This document shows positions 14,002 through 61,546 of a stretch of DNA of 64,000 bases, one piece after another. Below the pieces are notes generated by a model, which was not told where the DNA came from, searched no databases, and saw nothing but the letters and a program-made list of their open reading frames with translations. The translations under genes were made by a program, and so were the position numbers. Location of the stretch: sequence record OQ363659.1; one strand, 5' to 3'. Within the stretch, counting starts at the first letter, position 1; every line of letters starts with the position of its first letter.

Positions 14002-15375
14002 TTACTCGGCTTTGCCAGCGGTGGCAGCGACGTTCTCGTAGAAACCTACGAGTGCTTTAGTGGTGGTGTTGAGGTAGCCCAGATAGCTAACGGAGAAGCC
14101 CAGAGCACACAGTACGTACGAAGACATGAACTTACCGAACGGAGTACCTTCCATAGCGATTTCACTGAGGAAACCACGGAGGTCATTCGCTACAGCGTCA
14201 CGACGGTTACCGATATCCAGCAGGGACTTGGTACGAGTGATACCTTGTGCCAGTTCTTGTGCACTAGGAACTTTCACTTCTTTGGTAGGTTCACTACCTT
14301 CGACGCGTTCCAGTTTAACGGTAAGTGCTGAGCTCAGCTGTGTACTGACGATCTTAGGATCTTTCAGTTTGTCGTTGTGGTAGGTCAGGATAACCTCACG
14401 GCCACCTGGAAGTTCGGTAGTCTTAACGATCGACTTGCCTTCTGGATCACGTTGTACGCCAACAGTCAGAGCTTCAGGCAAGCACTTACCGAAGGTACCA
14501 GCCAGGTCTTTGAACAGACCGTTAACGATACCCAGCCATTCGTCTTCGTCTTCCAGGTTAGTATCTTTGACCTTAGCCTTGGTGCTGCGAACGAGGTCGA
14601 GGATAGCCTGTGGCCATTTGATCATCATACCTTCAGAAGCAGCCAACAGGGCCTGAACGGATTCGCCGTTAGAACCTACGATGTCACCGTTAGCAGTCAG
14701 CGATTTCAAACCACCGTAGTTAATGGCAGCGCCTTCTTTGATGCCACCAGCTTTGATGATCTTCTCAGCAGCTTCCAGACGCTTGGTGAGTTCATCACGG
14801 TTAGTGGACATGAAGTTCCAGGCGTTCATGATACCTTCGATCAGTTTCTTGATCGCTTCAACGATACCTTTACCTACAGCTTTAGCACCGGACTTCAGTT
14901 TGTCCAGGAGTTCCAGCGATACAGTCATACGACCGACTGGTGCATCAAATGATTCCAGAGCCGGAACGGTTTGAGCGAAGAACTGAGCATCATGACGACG
15001 CAGACTGATTTGAATAGCCTTAGCCAACGAGCTAGGGACGGATTCGTTACGGTCTACGTATTTGGTAACTTGACCGATGTGGTGTTCGAGGGCAGCTTTA
15101 CAAGCTTCCATCTTGGTGATGTCTTCACCGACCTGTACGCCTTCATTGATAGCGTTTTGGATAGCTGGGGTAACACCATCTGAGTCACCAGCTTTAACGG
15201 TATCAGCAGCAGTAGCAGCTTCGCCTTTCGAATCGGCTTCAGCAGTCGGTGCTTCTGGGTGATCTTTGGTGGCCGAAGCCGACGCATTGGTTACATCTAC
15301 TTGGCGAGCGACGCCATCGCTATCTTCCAGGCTTGCAAGAATGGAAGTGAGCTTATGGGTTGAGTGCTGTGGCAT
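14002..15375 (-). CDS. Internal head protein paralog
   Basis: ILASLEDS N-terminus nearly identical to the neighbour, ALEHH...ISL block, VSLE site. Confidence 0.8.
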   Translation of the reverse strand: MPQHSTHKLTSILASLEDSDGVARQVDVTNASASATKDHPEAPTAEADSKGEAATAADTVKAGDSDGVTPAIQNAINEGVQVGEDITKMEACKAALEHHIGQVTKYVDRNESVPSSLAKAIQISLRRHDAQFFAQTVPALESFDAPVGRMTVSLELLDKLKSGAKAVGKGIVEAIKKLIEGIMNAWNFMSTNRDELTKRLEAAEKIIKAGGIKEGAAINYGGLKSLTANGDIVGSNGESVQALLAASEGMMIKWPQAILDLVRSTKAKVKDTNLEDEDEWLGIVNGLFKDLAGTFGKCLPEALTVGVQRDPEGKSIVKTTELPGGREVILTYHNDKLKDPKIVSTQLSSALTVKLERVEGSEPTKEVKVPSAQELAQGITRTKSLLDIGNRRDAVANDLRGFLSEIAMEGTPFGKFMSSYVLCALGFSVSYLGYLNTTTKALVGFYENVAATAGKAE

Positions 15376-32576: not shown

Positions 32577-33116
32577 TCAGCGGTGCTCGAGTTCTCGGAT
32601 TTCTCCATTTTCCAGTTGGCGCATGTCACCATCTTCCAGGTAACGCGCAAATGGATTCGCATCAATCACATCTACAATGATGTCGGTCTCGCCGTAGTAA
32701 GGGTAGCTACCTGTCATTGCCTTCAGGCGATAGACAAATGAAGCCTCACTGTTTTCAATAACGACTGTAGAGAATGAAATGTCATCAGGGCCGAAAGACA
32801 TCTTCCGACTACGATTGATTTCAGCAGCGATATTAGCCGGGGTTGGAAGCCCCACAATTTTGATTCTTGTGCTCGTGCCTAGTACCTTTGGGTGTGCCAA
32901 ATCCAGACGACGATATACGAAGAATTCTTTAAGCCCCGTAAGGAGGTTGGTCATCTCAATAAAGGTACGGCCAGGGATGGCAGGCAGAGGGGCAAAGAAC
33001 ATGTCCTCAAAGCTAACTTGATTAGGTTTATAGTTCCTTTTCAAGTCATGGTTCACCTGCGCCACGAGTGCATCGCGGGAAGGCGTATCAAACGGGAAAC
33101 GATCTGTTGTGATCAT
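32577..33116 (-). CDS. Virion structural protein ending in an R-x-L-E-[DN]-G repeat
   Basis: FVYRRLDL block shared with 50516 and 51402; C-terminus ARYLEDGDMRQLENGEIRELEHR. Confidence 0.7.
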   Translation of the reverse strand: MITTDRFPFDTPSRDALVAQVNHDLKRNYKPNQVSFEDMFFAPLPAIPGRTFIEMTNLLTGLKEFFVYRRLDLAHPKVLGTSTRIKIVGLPTPANIAAEINRSRKMSFGPDDISFSTVVIENSEASFVYRLKAMTGSYPYYGETDIIVDVIDANPFARYLEDGDMRQLENGEIRELEHR

Positions 33117-50515: not shown

Positions 50516-51394
50516 ATGTACATCACACAAGACTACCTAAAGGTAGGGTCGTGGCAAGCTGTCATCGACATGATCAATGACAAGTATAACTTCCAACTCC
50601 AACCCGGAATTGTGAAGCTAAAAGAAATGAAAGCTTTGGGTCCCAAAAGGACCCAGATCGAAATCATTCCTAATCGGTCAACCAATCCGATTAACTTGAT
50701 GCCTGAGATCACTGAAACGATCTTCACCTACGATCGACTGGACTGCACTGAGTTCTTCCGTAACACAGTGGCGGTTAACATCAGTGGAATGAAGCTCCCG
50801 ATCACTACGTTCGATATCCTGAACTACATCGGTGCTAAGAATGAGATCGTGTTTGAGGTTGACGACTTCATTCACCAAACTTTCGATCACTACAGTGCTA
50901 TTGGTGAGGCTGACTTCGTTATCAAGGCTGACCCACGTTCCCTGCGATTTGTAGGGAGTCTAAAGGTTCGGTTAACCAACACGTTGAAGTTTGATCTGAC
51001 TACGCTATCAGGTCAAAGCTTTGAATTCCCGGATGTAGCGCAGCAACATGACAAGTTATTCATCAATGGTAACTTCGAAATGAATCGTTTCGACTTTACT
51101 GAACAACGTGAATTGTTGCGTAGTATTCCAGTTGGGTTGTACCATGATCCGGGTAAGGTAGCTCAGGCTATAAGTCGGCAGACCACGCAGGTATACTCAG
51201 TCAAGCCTACGCCCGCTACGCGCTCACTGGTGCACACTTTAGTTCAAGGTGAGCCACACTGTAAGGTTCTGTATAACGGCGCTCCTATCCCGCGATGGAC
51301 GTCTCGTACGGACTGTCAAAGGGTGATCGTAATCGAACTGAACACGACGTACTGCACGAGTGTCAGTGGTTATCTTCGTCTGCATTATAACTGA
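50516..51394 (+). CDS. Virion structural protein (phiKZ gp127-like)
   Basis: FTYDRLD block; 292 aa. Confidence 0.7.
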   Translation: MYITQDYLKVGSWQAVIDMINDKYNFQLQPGIVKLKEMKALGPKRTQIEIIPNRSTNPINLMPEITETIFTYDRLDCTEFFRNTVAVNISGMKLPITTFDILNYIGAKNEIVFEVDDFIHQTFDHYSAIGEADFVIKADPRSLRFVGSLKVRLTNTLKFDLTTLSGQSFEFPDVAQQHDKLFINGNFEMNRFDFTEQRELLRSIPVGLYHDPGKVAQAISRQTTQVYSVKPTPATRSLVHTLVQGEPHCKVLYNGAPIPRWTSRTDCQRVIVIELNTTYCTSVSGYLRLHYN

Positions 51395-58511: not shown

Positions 58512-59120
58512 CTATTCCAACCTGAACCCGAAACCTAGATCACTCAGATTTACTTTTTCCGGTGTCTCGGCTTCTTGTGTACTACCACTGTCTCGGTTAC
58601 CGTTTTTCCGAGGACTCTTGTTTCCCGTTTTTCCACCTTTACGTCCGGTGGCTTCGGCGGCTCTTCTTTGTTGGCGATTTCCACCTTCGGCTTTGGGGGC
58701 CTTGGTAGCTTTACTCGCTTTCGCTGGACTAGCTACCCTCCTTGACGACTTCTTGGTCGCCGGTTTGGGTATATCGTCGCTTACAGCGTCTTGTGGTTCA
58801 GGTTGTACAGGATTATCTGGCTCAGTATTTTTTCTCCTTTTATCCATTTCAGTATCAAGGTCGATTACCTTGAAGTCGATCTCGGATTGAACCGGTGGTT
58901 CTGCAACAACTGGCTCAACTACGGGTTCATCCGATAGTTGGACATCAGGTGTCGTTATATAACCATTCTCCTTGGTCTTGCGACGATCTATTTCGTTGAT
59001 GCGAACAGGACCGTCCACACCAGGGTAATAGTCGAAGCGGTGTTCCGCATTAACCATGGCTGAGAAATCACCATGGAAGTTGTTTTTGAGTACGTTATCA
59101 AACCGATCAAAAAAGTCCAT
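58512..59120 (-). CDS. Hypothetical protein with acidic then basic low-complexity tail
   Basis: GAGGA RBS; first gene after an early promoter. Confidence 0.7.
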   Translation of the reverse strand: MDFFDRFDNVLKNNFHGDFSAMVNAEHRFDYYPGVDGPVRINEIDRRKTKENGYITTPDVQLSDEPVVEPVVAEPPVQSEIDFKVIDLDTEMDKRRKNTEPDNPVQPEPQDAVSDDIPKPATKKSSRRVASPAKASKATKAPKAEGGNRQQRRAAEATGRKGGKTGNKSPRKNGNRDSGSTQEAETPEKVNLSDLGFGFRLE

Positions 59121-59161
59121 GACTAAATCCTCAGACAGGTCTTGTGGGTTACTGCCTAACA

Positions 59162-59181
59162 GTAATATAGATCTGAGATTT
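59162..59181 (-). promoter_or_regulatory. Early promoter AAATCTCAGATC-TATATTAC driving the nvRNAP beta operon
   Basis: Exact core just after the capsid terminator. Confidence 0.8.
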
Positions 59182-59208
59182 AATAGAGTCGGGTCGAGAC
59201 GCCATAAA

Positions 59209-59226
59209 GCCTACCCGAAGGTAGGC
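59209..59226 (-). terminator. Major capsid terminator
   Basis: GCCTACC-TTCG-GGTAGGC then TTTATGGC; lies 8 nt beyond the readthrough extension stop. Confidence 0.85.
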
Positions 59227-59233
59227 AGTATGA

Positions 59234-59320
59234 TTAAGCTTCTAGGTACCGTTGGGTAGTACCGTCTTCGAAGTACCGGATTGTACCGTCTTCGTATCGA
59301 CGGACTATTCCCGGATTCCT
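59234..59320 (-). other. In-frame C-terminal readthrough extension of major capsid (28 aa)
   Basis: After CCT TGA: RNPGIVRRYEDGTIRYFEDGTTQRYLEA-TAA; no start codon in frame. Confidence 0.7.
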
Positions 59321-61546
59321 TCAAGGTGCCTTAACAGCATCGATCAGTGGTTTGTTCCACTGCGATTTGCCCATCACTTCTTCCAGACCGGTGATGGTCA
59401 GGTTGATTGCGAACGGGATGTTGTTAACGTGCAGGTTGAACGGAACAGCTGCGATCTCACGAGTCACTTGCTGGCCACCACGAGTGATCGGCAGGTCGGC
59501 GATGACAGTCGACACGTAGAAGAACTGACCGAAGGACAGGATGTCGTTTTCGGTTGGGTTCTTACGAGTAGGAACGATCACCAGCTTACCATCGAACAGT
59601 TCGTTGTTGGTAGTTACCAGGTCGTACTCGAGGATTGCGCCCAGGGTACGGTCGTCGCCTTGAGTCATCAGGTAGTTACCGATTTCTTTGTCGGTAGCGA
59701 AGATGAACATTGGCTTCTCGTCTTGGTTGCCCGAGATCACACGGAACGCAGCTTCGATGTTCGATTCACGGTAGGCCGGGAACAGAATACCTTTAGCGAA
59801 GTTCAGGATGGTCGAGCAGACGTCTTGCCAGCGATCCTGAGACTTCAGGGTGTCGATGTGGTCTGGCAGGTGCAGCGAACCTTCACGGTAGGTCGGACGC
59901 ATCATGATGCTCAGGGCGCCTTCAACAGCACCGAACTTCGGACGGTCGTAACCATTACCAACAACTTCCTTCAGCTGAGCCAGGTAGTTCAGCAGACGTT
60001 TAACAGCGTTGTTGCTGTTACGGATGTTGGTGTTGACAGTCAGCGCCTTAACAACGTCGCCTGGACCTTGCTCATCCATGGTGGACATTGGCAGGGTAAC
60101 TGGGGCGTGCATTGGGATCGGGTGACGGAACTGGATCGCACGAGTTTGCAGCAGGTGACCACGCTGACGACGGTTGGTGTTGGTGAACTTCAGGTCGAGG
60201 TCGTAACCAACAACTTCCAGAGCACCGATAGCGTCTACCAGGGTTTTACCATCGCCGGATTCGATCGAGATCAGCTTACGGTCTTCGTCGACGATACGGT
60301 CGATTTCGATACCGGTAGCGCCGTAACGAGCGTCACCACGCGAGGTGGATACCGAACCGTTGAACGATACGCTGATACGAGCAGTCCACTTACGGTTAAC
60401 CAGCTCTTGCATCTGAGCCGAAACCGAACCGTCGATTGCTTTGGTGTCTTCGCCAACAACCAGGTCTTCAGAGATGAAGTCCAGTTTAGCCAGACGGGTG
60501 TCACCGATCAGACCAGGCTGGAACACAGCGGTAGGCAGACGGTCAACTACGAAGCGAATGATCTTACCGTCGAACTTGACGTACAGAGCTTTCAGGCGGC
60601 CGCTTGGGTCGATGGTGTCCGAAATGTCCAGCATGCCTTTGTTGATCAGCAGGTTGGCGTTCGAGTTACCCATCAGGTCGATCTTGACGTTCGGACGCAG
60701 AGGACCAGTAGTGATGGTCATGTTCTGTTCGTTGGTCACGGTGTGGTGCGGAACTACAGCCGGATCGGTGAAGAACTTCAGGTTGGTACCATCAGGATCT
60801 ACAGCAGGGATCAGGTCGGTGCAGTTGTCGTCCAGGATCGACGGATCACGGTAGGCTTCTACCATGTTGACTTCTTCGTTGGCCAGCTTCTGACCGGAGA
60901 CAGCGTGGTAAACGTCTTTCATTACAGCGATGTAAGGAAGGACCTGAACAACACCACCTTCTACCGGGTTAATAACGGTAGTTGGGTACAGACGTTCAGC
61001 GAACTCATCCTGACGGGAAGCTTCCAGGTTGTAGCCAACGGTGACTACGCGGAAGTCGCGCTGAGATTTTTCGTTGTAGTTTTCCAGACCCAGGTGGTCT
61101 TGGAAGACTTGCAGGGAACCAGCAGGACCAGCGAATTCGTGACGGACGTTGTGGACGTGCTCTTCGTTCGAGACGACTTCTTTAGCAACGGCACGCAGAG
61201 CTTTCTTGTAAGCTTCTGGGTCAGCACAGGCGATGGCAGCCATGGCAGCAGCGCGCTGTTGGTTCTCGGTGATGTAAGCCTTGCCCGACTTGTGGTCGAA
61301 GTGTTCGAAACCAAACTTCTTCATGGATTCGCCGATGGTGCTATACAGCTGACCAGCAGTGGCGCGACCGCTTTCGGTGATGTCACCGAAGTCTTCTTGG
61401 CTGACGAATTCTACCAGGCCTTTACCTTTGGCCAGGACGGAGTCGCCGTAGTTCTTTTCGAGATCCAGTGCACCGAGGAAGTCTTCCATCGAGAAGCGGG
61501 TGTATTGCTTCTGTGCATTATGTTTAAACAGTGAATCGAGATTCAT
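59321..61546 (-). CDS. Major capsid protein (phiKZ gp120-like)
   Basis: 741 aa, strongest codon bias; FSME, VSQE, LGLE propeptide sites; QDEFAERLYPT, TNTNRRQRG motifs; next to DnaB. Confidence 0.92.
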   Translation of the reverse strand: MNLDSLFKHNAQKQYTRFSMEDFLGALDLEKNYGDSVLAKGKGLVEFVSQEDFGDITESGRATAGQLYSTIGESMKKFGFEHFDHKSGKAYITENQQRAAAMAAIACADPEAYKKALRAVAKEVVSNEEHVHNVRHEFAGPAGSLQVFQDHLGLENYNEKSQRDFRVVTVGYNLEASRQDEFAERLYPTTVINPVEGGVVQVLPYIAVMKDVYHAVSGQKLANEEVNMVEAYRDPSILDDNCTDLIPAVDPDGTNLKFFTDPAVVPHHTVTNEQNMTITTGPLRPNVKIDLMGNSNANLLINKGMLDISDTIDPSGRLKALYVKFDGKIIRFVVDRLPTAVFQPGLIGDTRLAKLDFISEDLVVGEDTKAIDGSVSAQMQELVNRKWTARISVSFNGSVSTSRGDARYGATGIEIDRIVDEDRKLISIESGDGKTLVDAIGALEVVGYDLDLKFTNTNRRQRGHLLQTRAIQFRHPIPMHAPVTLPMSTMDEQGPGDVVKALTVNTNIRNSNNAVKRLLNYLAQLKEVVGNGYDRPKFGAVEGALSIMMRPTYREGSLHLPDHIDTLKSQDRWQDVCSTILNFAKGILFPAYRESNIEAAFRVISGNQDEKPMFIFATDKEIGNYLMTQGDDRTLGAILEYDLVTTNNELFDGKLVIVPTRKNPTENDILSFGQFFYVSTVIADLPITRGGQQVTREIAAVPFNLHVNNIPFAINLTITGLEEVMGKSQWNKPLIDAVKAP

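What the first reader, a model, noticed from the sequence alone, without database searches (positions are those of the whole stretch)
59234..59330. Major capsid stop codon looks programmed for readthrough, adding an R-x-x-E-D-G repeat tag
Seen: the capsid ORF ends AAG GCA CCT TGA, and the next 28 codons in the same frame read RNPGIVRRYEDGTIRYFEDGTTQRYLEA-TAA. The terminator starts only after that TAA. The extension has no in-frame ATG/GTG/TTG. It holds three R-x-hydrophobic-E-D-G units whose copies differ at synonymous positions (CGA/CGG, ACA/ACT), as expected under protein-level selection. The same repeat (ARYLEDGDMRQLENGEIRELEHR) ends the 179-aa structural protein at 32577-33116. Known: UGA followed by A is a leaky context in bacteria, and Qbeta makes its minor coat protein A1 by UGA readthrough. 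Inference: a minority of capsid subunits carry a 29-residue extension, i.e. a minor capsid protein made by recoding.
Basis: partly seen in the sequence, partly recalled or inferred. Interest (0 to 1): 0.9.

Follow-up and report, generated by a model that had tools for sequence, protein, structure and literature searches.

The report
Capsid gene with conserved leaky stop
The major capsid gene of this giant Pseudomonas phage, and of nearly all its phiKZ-like relatives, ends in an invariant TGA followed by a short in-frame peptide under protein-level selection, so a small share of capsid subunits very probably carries a read-through tail that nobody has annotated.

Summary
The window is Pseudomonas phage D6, a phiKZ-like jumbo phage. 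Its major capsid gene (minus strand, 59321-61546) ends in TGA-A. Twenty-eight in-frame codons and a TAA follow, and then a terminator-like hairpin.

Comparative evidence supports programmed read-through:
- All 26 distinct relatives that carry the tail have TGA as the first stop, and the next base is never T. The second stop and the neighbouring genes' stops vary.
- The tail frame is open in all of them, and every indel is a multiple of three.
- A codon model gives omega 0.35 (p = 1.5e-15 against neutrality). The two shifted frames show no constraint.
- None of 107 capsid protein clusters has a sense codon at this position.
- Two lineages that lost the tail switched to TAA-T.
- D6 encodes no suppressor tRNA.

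The tail is the same C-terminal module (RxLEDGxxRYLEDGxxRxLEx) that ends the phiKZ gp143-like DUF7941 protein.

No protein evidence exists. What the tail does and how efficient the read-through is remain inferred. I found no published report. It resembles the Qbeta A1 read-through protein, here in a dsDNA jumbo phage, but it is dispensable in some natural lineages.

The parts
59321..61546 (-). Major capsid protein gene (741 aa, phiKZ gp120 homologue), stop included.
   Evidence: ORF list. Pfam PhiKZ_MCP E=2.5e-228. Annotated 'major capsid protein' WDS62272.1 in OQ363659.1.
59321..59323 (-). The TGA stop proposed to be read through. The next base is A and the preceding codon is CCT (Pro).
   Evidence: TGA in 26 of 26 distinct tail-bearing relatives, with next base A in 18, G in 7, C in 1 and T in 0. 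Neighbouring genes' stops vary.
59237..59320 (-). In-frame 28-codon extension RNPGIVRRYEDGTIRYFEDGTTQRYLEA. It is not annotated in any record.
   Evidence: Open in frame 0 for 24-30 codons in 23 of 23 unique relatives, while the other frames are broken. All indels are multiples of 3. Omega 0.345, likelihood-ratio test p=1.5e-15. tblastn shows 'none' annotated under it.
59279..59302 (-). Repeat unit 1, RRYEDGTI.
   Evidence: Alignment A6. R, E and G are invariant and are encoded by 2-4 different codons across relatives.
59252..59278 (-). Repeat unit 2, RYFEDGTTQ.
   Evidence: Alignments. The Arg column uses CGG, CGT, CGA, AGA and AGG.
59237..59251 (-). Truncated repeat unit 3, RYLEA, which would be the C-terminus of the read-through product.
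   Evidence: It ends in the same register as the gp143-like tails (RELEHR, RYLES, RRLEDE).
59234..59236 (-). Second stop (TAA), which ends the extension.
   Evidence: Among 23 relatives it is TAA in 16, TGA in 5 and TAG in 2. It is often backed by another in-frame stop 1-2 codons later.
59209..59226 (-). Terminator-like hairpin GCCUACC-UUCG-GGUAGGC, followed by UUUAUG.
   Evidence: strand folding. Relatives have a hairpin at the same position with different stem sequences. The consensus scan does not call it.
59299..59304 (-). 5' arm (UCCGUC) of a possible conserved long-range RNA stem. It starts 17 nt after the UGA.
   Evidence: RNAalifold and pair counts: 89.5% of cells paired against 30-50% when slid, and covariation above 499 of 500 shuffles. 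The codon before the first Arg ends in C in 18 of 19 sequences.
59261..59266 (-). 3' arm (GACGGU) of that possible stem, inside repeat 2.
   Evidence: The Asp codon of repeat 2 is GAC in 16 of 18 sequences, whereas the Asp/Asn codon of repeat 1 varies freely.
32577..33116 (-). 179-aa virion protein, homologue of phiKZ gp143, with a DUF7941 N-terminal domain and a tail.
   Evidence: tblastn to PHIKZ143. The AF2 model matches PDB 9xqd_0 (phiKZ peripheral baseplate, 150-aa chain) at E=2e-6.
32580..32645 (-). C-terminal RxLEDG module of the 179-aa protein (RYLEDGDMRQLENGEIRELEHR). It is the only other copy of the module in the genome.
   Evidence: It aligns in register with the capsid extensions. 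It is conserved in phiKZ, Noxifer and 10 metagenomic relatives.

Best explanation
The capsid mRNA runs through the TGA and the 28-codon tail to the hairpin. Most ribosomes terminate at UGA and make the normal 741-aa capsid protein. A minority decode the UGA, most likely with tRNA-Trp(CCA), and continue to the TAA. The product is a capsid subunit with a 29-residue C-terminal tail. Selection keeps the stop as UGA, keeps U out of the following position, and keeps the tail's sequence.

In phiKZ the capsid C-terminal arms meet at the centre of each capsomer. In pentons they contact the outer decoration protein gp244. The tail would therefore emerge at capsomer centres, probably on the outside, on a few subunits per capsid. 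The tail is the same 2.5-repeat module that ends the gp143-like DUF7941 protein, so it probably binds the same partner as that module.

Shown here: the anatomy, the conservation, the coding selection, and the link between TGA and the presence of the tail. Inferred: that translation occurs, its efficiency, which amino acid is inserted at the UGA, where the tail sits, and what it does.
For: 1. The first stop is TGA in 26 of 26 distinct tail-bearing sequences from at least seven genera (phiKZ, PhiPA3, 201phi2-1, Phabio, Psa21, HPP-Temi, Noxifer) and from metagenomes.
2. The second stop varies (16 TAA, 5 TGA, 2 TAG). The stops of the two neighbouring genes vary among the same 10 phages.
3. The base after the TGA is never T, although TGA-T is the commonest TGA context in D6 (38 of 88).
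4. Frame 0 is open in every sequence and all indels are multiples of 3.
5. Codon model: omega 0.345, 2dlnL = 63.7, p=1.5e-15. The shifted frames give 0.88 and 2.66.
6. Invariant Arg, Glu and Gly residues are encoded by up to 5 synonymous codons, including switches between CGN and AGR.
7. No canonical start codon lies in the tail.
8. None of 107 capsid protein clusters has the module fused through a sense codon.
9. The two lineages in the clade without the tail (L068, by a deletion that leaves an out-of-frame remnant, and L072) both have TAA-T. The distant relatives without a tail have TAA.
10. The tail aligns in register with a genuine C-terminal protein module in the gp143 homologues.
11. No UCA-anticodon tRNA is found in the whole D6 genome.
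Against: - No peptide, ribosome-profiling or reporter data exist. A literature search for the tail's tryptic peptides found nothing.
- The tail is dispensable. An identical tail-less capsid protein occurs on 15 contigs from several samples.
- Constraint is moderate: omega 0.35, against 0.12 for the last 300 codons of the capsid gene.
- Some nucleotide-level conservation, a possible RNA stem, overlaps the tail and could account for part of the signal.
- The published phiKZ capsid structure reports no extra density attributed to a tail (PMC11297242). Icosahedral averaging would hide a rare, flexible tail.
Confidence: 0.78

Rival explanations
1. Tolerated leak. UGA is read through at a basal rate in this very highly expressed gene. 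Selection has only shaped the downstream codons so that the accidental product is harmless and ends quickly. The tail has no positive function.
For: The tail has been lost without obvious cost in two natural lineages. Constraint is moderate (omega 0.35). Extra in-frame stops often back up the second stop.
Against: If the leak were only a burden, changing TGA to TAA would remove it. Instead TGA is invariant wherever the tail exists and TAA appears only where the tail is gone. 'Harmlessness' does not explain a specific 2.5-repeat module shared in register with another protein's C-terminus.
Confidence: 0.08
2. The conservation is at the nucleic-acid level. The region would be an RNA structure or DNA repeat in the 3' untranslated region (mRNA stability, termination control) that happens to be open in frame 0. 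It is not translated.
For: A 5-6 bp long-range stem is better conserved than slid or shuffled controls. Two synonymous sites are unusually fixed. The D6 region folds with z = -3.3.
Against: The stem covers only 12 of about 84 nt. An RNA element does not explain frame-specific omega < 1 with neutral shifted frames, indels only in multiples of 3, Arg conserved across CGN and AGR codons, or identity with a protein module elsewhere. No Rfam family matches.
Confidence: 0.05
3. The tail is translated on its own as a free 24-30 aa peptide, by reinitiation after termination at the TGA or from a non-canonical start.
For: A purine-rich stretch (GGAAAGGG) follows the TGA in many relatives. In the metagenomic relative L029 an ATG lies two codons after the TGA and opens a 201-aa Big_2 ORF in the same frame.
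Against: No ATG, GTG or TTG occurs in the D6 tail, and no near-cognate start is conserved at any column. This reading explains neither the in-frame requirement nor the invariance of TGA, since reinitiation works after any stop.
Confidence: 0.04
4. Specific recoding by dedicated machinery: selenocysteine insertion, a phage suppressor tRNA, or an alternative code in late genes.
For: UGA is the selenocysteine codon, and a hairpin lies downstream. D6 carries 14 tRNA genes.
Against: None of the 14 tRNAs has a UCA anticodon. No SECIS or other Rfam match was found. The stem starts 17 nt from the UGA, has a 35-nt loop, and has no conserved apical motif. TGA ends about a third of D6 ORFs normally.
Confidence: 0.02
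5. Decaying relic. An ancestral longer capsid protein suffered a nonsense mutation, and the downstream codons have not yet eroded.
For: The tail looks like a real protein C-terminus.
Against: Synonymous sites are near saturation across the clade (pS about 0.6). Even so, the frame stays open and constrained in 26 lineages. No lineage or database cluster retains a sense codon.
Confidence: 0.02

Closest known systems
Qbeta A1 (read-through) protein of ssRNA coliphage Qbeta
   Same: The coat gene ends in a leaky UGA. A few percent of ribosomes read through, without any suppressor, into an in-frame extension. This gives a minor coat variant that is built into the capsid (my own knowledge of the classical literature).
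   Different: Qbeta is a small ssRNA phage, its extension is about 200 aa, and A1 is essential for infectivity. Here the phage is a 307-kb dsDNA jumbo phage with a T=27 HK97-fold capsid, the extension is only 24-30 aa of short repeats, and natural tail-less lineages exist. Read-through here is inferred, not measured.
Frameshift-derived long capsid proteins of tailed phages (T7/T3 gene 10B; Listeria phages A118, A500, PSA; Lactobacillus phage A2)
   Same: A dsDNA tailed phage makes a minor, C-terminally extended version of its major capsid protein by recoding near the 3' end of the gene, at a set ratio (review PMC5009743).
   Different: Those phages use -1 or +1 frameshifting into another frame, often adding an Ig-like domain. 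Here the extension is in frame 0 behind a stop, and both other frames are closed.
C-terminal tail of phiKZ gp143-type DUF7941 proteins
   Same: Same module, same length and same register: RxLE[DN]Gxx, RYLE[DN]Gxx, RxLEx, then the C-terminus. It occupies the position of the 'linker' that follows the DUF7941 N-terminal domain. A preprint proposes that this linker docks onto the next protomer (10.64898/2026.04.21.720040).
   Different: In gp143 the module is part of the normal ORF. On the capsid protein it lies behind a stop. The other DUF7941 protein in the window (50516-51394) has no such motif in its linker, so the motif is not a general DUF7941 feature. gp143 is also reported as a holin regulator (PMC12894885).
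Stop-codon reassignment in crAss-like and Lak phages (suppressor-tRNA driven)
   Same: In-frame stop codons are decoded in late structural genes of large phages (PMC9523058 listed).
   Different: Those phages carry suppressor tRNAs and many in-frame stops. D6 has none, and only this one conserved site was found.

Membership tests
Programmed stop-codon read-through giving a minor coat protein (Qbeta A1 type) | The coat ORF ends in a leaky stop (UGA) that is conserved as that codon. | tested here: met
   TGA in 26 of 26 tail-bearing relatives. The next base is never T. Control stops vary.
Programmed stop-codon read-through giving a minor coat protein (Qbeta A1 type) | An in-frame downstream ORF with no start of its own, under protein-level selection. 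| tested here: met
   Open in all sequences, indels in multiples of 3, omega 0.345 with p=1.5e-15, shifted frames neutral.
Programmed stop-codon read-through giving a minor coat protein (Qbeta A1 type) | The extended protein is detected in infected cells or virions at a few percent of the coat protein. | not testable with these tools
   No proteomic or ribosome-profiling data are held. A peptide search of the literature was empty.
Programmed stop-codon read-through giving a minor coat protein (Qbeta A1 type) | Decoding is by an ordinary near-cognate tRNA, with no dedicated suppressor. | tested here: met
   No UCA-anticodon tRNA in the 307-kb genome. tRNA-Trp(CCA) is present. The identity of the decoding tRNA was not tested.
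Programmed stop-codon read-through giving a minor coat protein (Qbeta A1 type) | The read-through product is essential for infectivity. | tested here: not met
   The L068 and L072 lineages lack the tail. The L068-type capsid protein is on 15 contigs.
Frameshift-derived capsid extension (T7 10B, Listeria PSA type) | The extension is encoded in the -1 or +1 frame and reached at a slippery site. | tested here: not met
   The extension is in frame 0. Frames +1 and +2 carry early stops in about half of the relatives.
Selenocysteine insertion | A SECIS hairpin lies directly 3' of the UGA. | tested here: not met
   No Rfam match. The only conserved stem starts 17 nt downstream and has a 35-nt loop.
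Stop-codon reassignment by a phage suppressor tRNA | A suppressor tRNA gene and many in-frame stops in late genes. | tested here: not met
   14 tRNAs, none a suppressor. About a third of long ORFs end normally in TGA.
gp143-type C-terminal RxLEDG module | 2.5 repeats, RxLE[DN]Gxx / RxLE[DN]Gxx / RxLEx, ending the polypeptide. | tested here: met
   Essentially gapless alignment in register. R4, E7, G9, R12, G17 and L23 are invariant across 8 capsid tails and 5 gp143 tails.
gp143-type C-terminal RxLEDG module | A shared binding partner or function. | not testable with these tools
   Only single-chain prediction is available. In the AF2 model the tail has pLDDT of about 68, with beta-bridges every 8 residues. 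There is no PDB sequence match.

The most novel reading that the evidence does not exclude
The read-through tail is a functional address tag. A few capsid subunits per virion display, at capsomer centres, the same C-terminal module as the DUF7941 protein gp143, which is both a virion protein and a holin regulator. The capsid and gp143 would then bind a common partner. That could anchor DUF7941-type fibres to the head, or couple capsid accumulation to lysis timing. The UGA, its context, a possible downstream RNA stem and (in D6) a phage tRNA-Trp with a U11-A24 D-stem would together set the dose.
Probability: 0.25. Interest if true: 0.85.

Novelty: new member of a known kind. Interest (0 to 1): 0.72.

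Why it matters
phiKZ and its relatives are the main model for nucleus-forming jumbo phages. Their capsids have been solved by cryo-EM and their virions analysed by mass spectrometry, yet this product is absent from every annotation and from the papers I could search.

If confirmed, it would be a case of programmed stop-codon read-through in the capsid gene of a dsDNA tailed phage. It would add a hidden minor capsid species to a well-studied virion. It would also give a short, naturally tolerated display site at the C-terminus of the capsid protein. The shared module ties the capsid to a DUF7941 virion protein and lysis regulator, which suggests a concrete interaction to test. More generally, it shows that conserved stop identity plus downstream coding selection can reveal recoding events in phage genomes that gene callers miss.

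Tried and rejected
- Short-peptide tblastn of the tail against 50,697 phage records found only the closest relatives and one chance hit, so it was too insensitive to be useful.
- A profile of the module against PDB sequences gave only chance hits.
- Pfam gives nothing for the 28-aa tail.
- I tested whether the motif is the general DUF7941 linker. The 292-aa DUF7941 protein in the window has no such motif, so that version of the idea was dropped.
- I tested whether loss of the capsid tail goes with loss of the gp143 tail. It does not: the tail-less lineage keeps ARYLEDGDPRLMETGEIRELEHA.
- The simple terminator scan does not call the hairpin. I rely on the fold and on its conservation instead.
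- A guess at the position of the Noxifer capsid gene was wrong. The gene was found by blastn instead.
- One contig look-up failed because the stop codon was included in the coordinates.
- Literature searches for read-through in phiKZ-like phages, for the tail's tryptic peptides and for phiKZ ribosome profiling returned nothing relevant.
- The sub-threshold RAGATH-23 Rfam hit at 59100-59183 (23.5 bits against a 92.6-bit cut-off) is treated as chance.
Full report
**What the window is.** A megablast of 58500-60300 matches Pseudomonas phage D6 (OQ363659.1, 307,402 bp, host P. syringae pv. tomato DC3000) at 100% identity. Window coordinate x corresponds to record coordinate x + 124000. D6 is a phiKZ-like jumbo phage. 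The ORF at 59321..61546 (minus strand, 741 aa) is annotated as the major capsid protein and matches Pfam PhiKZ_MCP at E=2.5e-228.

**Checking the observation.**
- On the minus strand the capsid ORF ends AAG GCA CCT TGA (TGA at 59323-59321), and the next base is A.
- Frame 0 continues RNPGIVRRYEDGTIRYFEDGTTQRYLEA (59320-59237) and ends in TAA (59236-59234). Both other frames contain stops.
- None of the 28 codons is ATG, GTG or TTG.
- A hairpin, GCCUACC-UUCG-GGUAGGC (59226-59209), followed by UUUAUG, begins 8 nt after the TAA. The consensus terminator scan misses it because the U-run is short. Relatives have a hairpin at the same place with different stem sequences.
- The peptide holds two full R-x-x-E-D-G-x-x units and a truncated third.
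- The 179-aa protein at 32577..33116 ends ARYLEDGDMRQLENGEIRELEHR.
- In six-frame scans of the window and of the whole genome the double motif occurs only at these two sites. It gave no hits in 30 shuffles of the window.

**Relatives.** I extracted the capsid 3' end from three sources:
- ten GenBank phages: D6, Psa21, RVTF4, HPP-Temi, PhiPA3, PA1C, Viktualia, Phabio, 201phi2-1 and KTN4 (phiKZ species);
- 29 IMG/VR contigs;
- Noxifer and 11 metagenome contigs.

Twenty-six distinct sequences carry an in-frame extension of 24-30 codons with consensus xGKGxxRYLE[ND]GTxRYLEDGxARRLER. For example, phiKZ has AGKGYRYLENGTIRYLEDGNARKLEE and Noxifer has LPAAPSSRKFEDGSLRSTEGGVPRTLES. No record annotates it.

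**Stop-codon pattern.**
- The first stop is TGA in all 26 sequences. The second stop is TAA in 16, TGA in 5 and TAG in 2 of the first 23.
- In the same ten phages the upstream gp119-like gene ends TAA in 4, TAG in 4 and TGA in 2. The downstream gene ends TAG in 4, TGA in 3 and TAA in 3.
- About 267 long D6 ORFs end in TAA (55%), TGA (33%) or TAG (12%).
- TGA-T is the commonest TGA context in D6 (38 of 88). The capsid TGA is followed by A in 18, G in 7, C in 1 and T in 0 sequences.
- The codon before the stop encodes Pro, Ala or Gly.
- Many relatives have a further in-frame stop one or two codons after the second stop.

**Is the extension coding?**
- Frame 0 is open for 24-30 codons in 23 of 23 unique sequences. 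Frames +1 and +2 are closed within 16 codons in about half.
- Every indel in the codon alignment is a multiple of three, unlike the non-coding DNA further downstream.
- Invariant residues use many synonymous codons. The first Arg uses 4 codons, the second Arg uses 5 (including AGA and AGG as well as CGN), and the Gly columns use 3-4.
- In nine phylogenetically separate pairs, differences by codon position are 61, 46 and 84 (p=0.003). Nei-Gojobori pN/pS is 0.55 in frame 0, against 0.88 and 1.5 in the shifted frames.
- I fitted a GY+F3X4 codon model to 26 sequences, on a tree built from the last 900 nt of the capsid gene. It gives omega = 0.345 and rejects omega = 1 (2dlnL = 63.7, p=1.5e-15). 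The shifted frames give 0.88 and 2.66. The last 300 capsid codons give 0.124.

The extension is therefore under protein-level purifying selection in the capsid frame. The constraint is weaker than on the capsid shell itself.

**Sense codons and natural knock-outs.**
- A search of 5.8 billion proteins with the capsid C-terminus returned 107 clusters at 90% identity. None has the module fused in frame, and all end where the TGA lies.
- Two lineages inside the clade lack the extension, and both have TAA-T.
- L068 (RCUK01000188.1, 93% identical capsid protein) retains an out-of-frame remnant, 'GTARFLE*', of the third repeat. A deletion of roughly 58 nt removed the TGA and the first two repeats.
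- L072 (64% identical) has no trace of the tail.
- The L068-type capsid protein occurs on 15 contigs. Some of these have a GIY-YIG homing-endonuclease gene inserted just downstream.
- More distant relatives end in TAA without the module. These are the metagenomic capsids at 55-57% identity and the phages LucasX, Deimos-Minion, SPN3US and RSL2.

Two conclusions follow. TGA tracks the presence of the tail, which is what a functional read-through signal predicts. The tail is not essential.

**How the stop could be decoded.** ARAGORN on the whole D6 genome finds 14 tRNAs, all at record 9.9-19 kb, and none has a UCA anticodon. Near-cognate decoding by tRNA-Trp(CCA) is therefore the simplest route. 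This step is inferred from the classical literature on UGA read-through, which I recall rather than retrieved.

D6 itself encodes a tRNA-Trp(CCA). Its D-stem reads GUUC/GAAC, which gives a U11-A24 pair. From memory, that is the configuration created by the G24A Hirsh UGA-suppressor mutation in E. coli tRNA-Trp. I did not verify this, and I did not check whether relatives or the host share it.

RNAalifold finds one conserved long-range stem:
- It pairs xCCGUx, starting 17 nt after the UGA, with xACGGx in repeat 2.
- 89.5% of cells are paired, against 30-50% when the partner is slid.
- Covariation exceeds 499 of 500 shuffles, but most double changes come from one clade.
- Two synonymous sites are unusually fixed.

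It may modulate read-through or mRNA stability. This remains open. No Rfam family, SECIS included, matches the region.

**What the tail is.**
- The 179-aa protein is the homologue of phiKZ gp143.
- Its AF2 model (pLDDT 76) matches the 150-residue chain 9xqd_0 of the phiKZ peripheral baseplate at E=2e-6. A Goslar preprint identifies that part of the baseplate model as the N-terminal domain of the DUF7941 protein gp127. It lists gp143 as a DUF7941 protein and proposes that the segment after the N-terminal domain docks onto the next protomer (10.64898/2026.04.21.720040).
- A separate study reports gp143 as a non-essential regulator of the holin gp142 (PMC12894885; TnSeq preprint).
- Capsid tails and gp143 tails align essentially without gaps, and both end in the same register. 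The consensus is xxxRxLEDGxxRYLEDGxxRxLEx, with R4, E7, G9, R12, G17 and L23 invariant.
- The other DUF7941 protein in the window lacks the motif.
- The tail-less lineage keeps the gp143 tail, so the two copies of the module do not depend on each other.
- The phiKZ capsid structure places the capsid C-terminal arms (residues 728-747) in a six-helix bundle around a 9-Å pore at each hexon centre. In pentons the arms lie against the outer protein gp244 (PMC11297242).

A tail would therefore emerge at capsomer centres, probably on the outside. Six tails per hexon might not fit there. That would explain why a stop, rather than a sense codon, is always kept. This last step is inference.

**Comparison and novelty.**
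- The closest mechanism is Qbeta A1: UGA read-through of the coat gene, no suppressor, and a minor capsid component.
- Among tailed phages, the known way to make a long capsid protein is frameshifting, as in T7/T3 gene 10, Listeria phages A118, A500 and PSA, and Lactobacillus phage A2 (PMC5009743).
- Searches of about 8.4 million papers found no report of read-through in phiKZ-like capsid genes.

I class it as a new member of a known kind: read-through-derived minor coat protein. It is unusual in three respects: a dsDNA jumbo phage, a very short repeat tag shared with another virion protein, and dispensability.

**Verdict.** I put 0.78 on the tail being translated by read-through and maintained by selection. 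The function of the tail is unknown. The best lead is a binding partner shared with the gp143 tail.

Noticed in passing
L058:14813-14888 (D6 record 14813-14888, outside the window): D6 encodes tRNA-Trp(CCA) with a GUUC/GAAC D-stem, which gives a U11-A24 pair. From memory, this is the configuration produced by the E. coli Hirsh UGA-suppressor mutation G24A. It might raise UGA read-through during infection.
   Followed up: partly
L029:5257-5871 (IMGVR_UViG_3300043122_000192): A distant capsid gene (55% identity) ends ...GDTTTP TGA AAG GGT ATG. The same frame continues for 203 codons and encodes a Big_2 Ig-like domain (E=4.7e-9), followed by the usual terminator. Sister contigs have TAA and no such ORF. 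This is either a second read-through case or a tightly coupled decoration gene.
   Followed up: partly
L042:1380-1470 (Escherichia phage Goslar, NC_048170): The Goslar capsid gene also ends TGA-A and is followed by 28 open in-frame codons (TTVAASLDDILDDNVADGFIAPDIHPAP) with no RxLEDG motif. I did not check whether relatives conserve it.
   Followed up: no
L079:12346-12993 and L080:5123-5770: A 215-aa GIY-YIG homing-endonuclease gene is inserted just downstream of the capsid gene in some members of the tail-less lineage and is absent from L078. It may be linked to remodelling of this region.
   Followed up: partly
window 59140-59208 (minus strand): The sequences CUUUAUG(G/U)CGUC, right after the hairpin, and AAUCUCAGAUCUAUAUUAC, about 35 nt further on, are nearly invariant across genera. 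They are probably phage-type promoter or processing signals for the next gene.
   Followed up: no
P0062-P0106; L027, L030, L032, L038: More distant PhiKZ_MCP proteins carry 15-35-residue low-complexity tails rich in T, P, E, D and G, usually ending in -TP, at the position where the Pseudomonas clade has the stop plus the read-through tail.
   Followed up: no
P0001, P0003, P0006, P0007: JGI names these capsid proteins 'virulence-associated protein VapD', which appears to be a mis-annotation.
   Followed up: no
window 59100-59183 (minus strand): A sub-threshold Rfam hit to RAGATH-23 (23.5 bits against a gathering score of 92.6, E=0.017) lies in the leader of the next gene. It is probably chance.
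   Followed up: no
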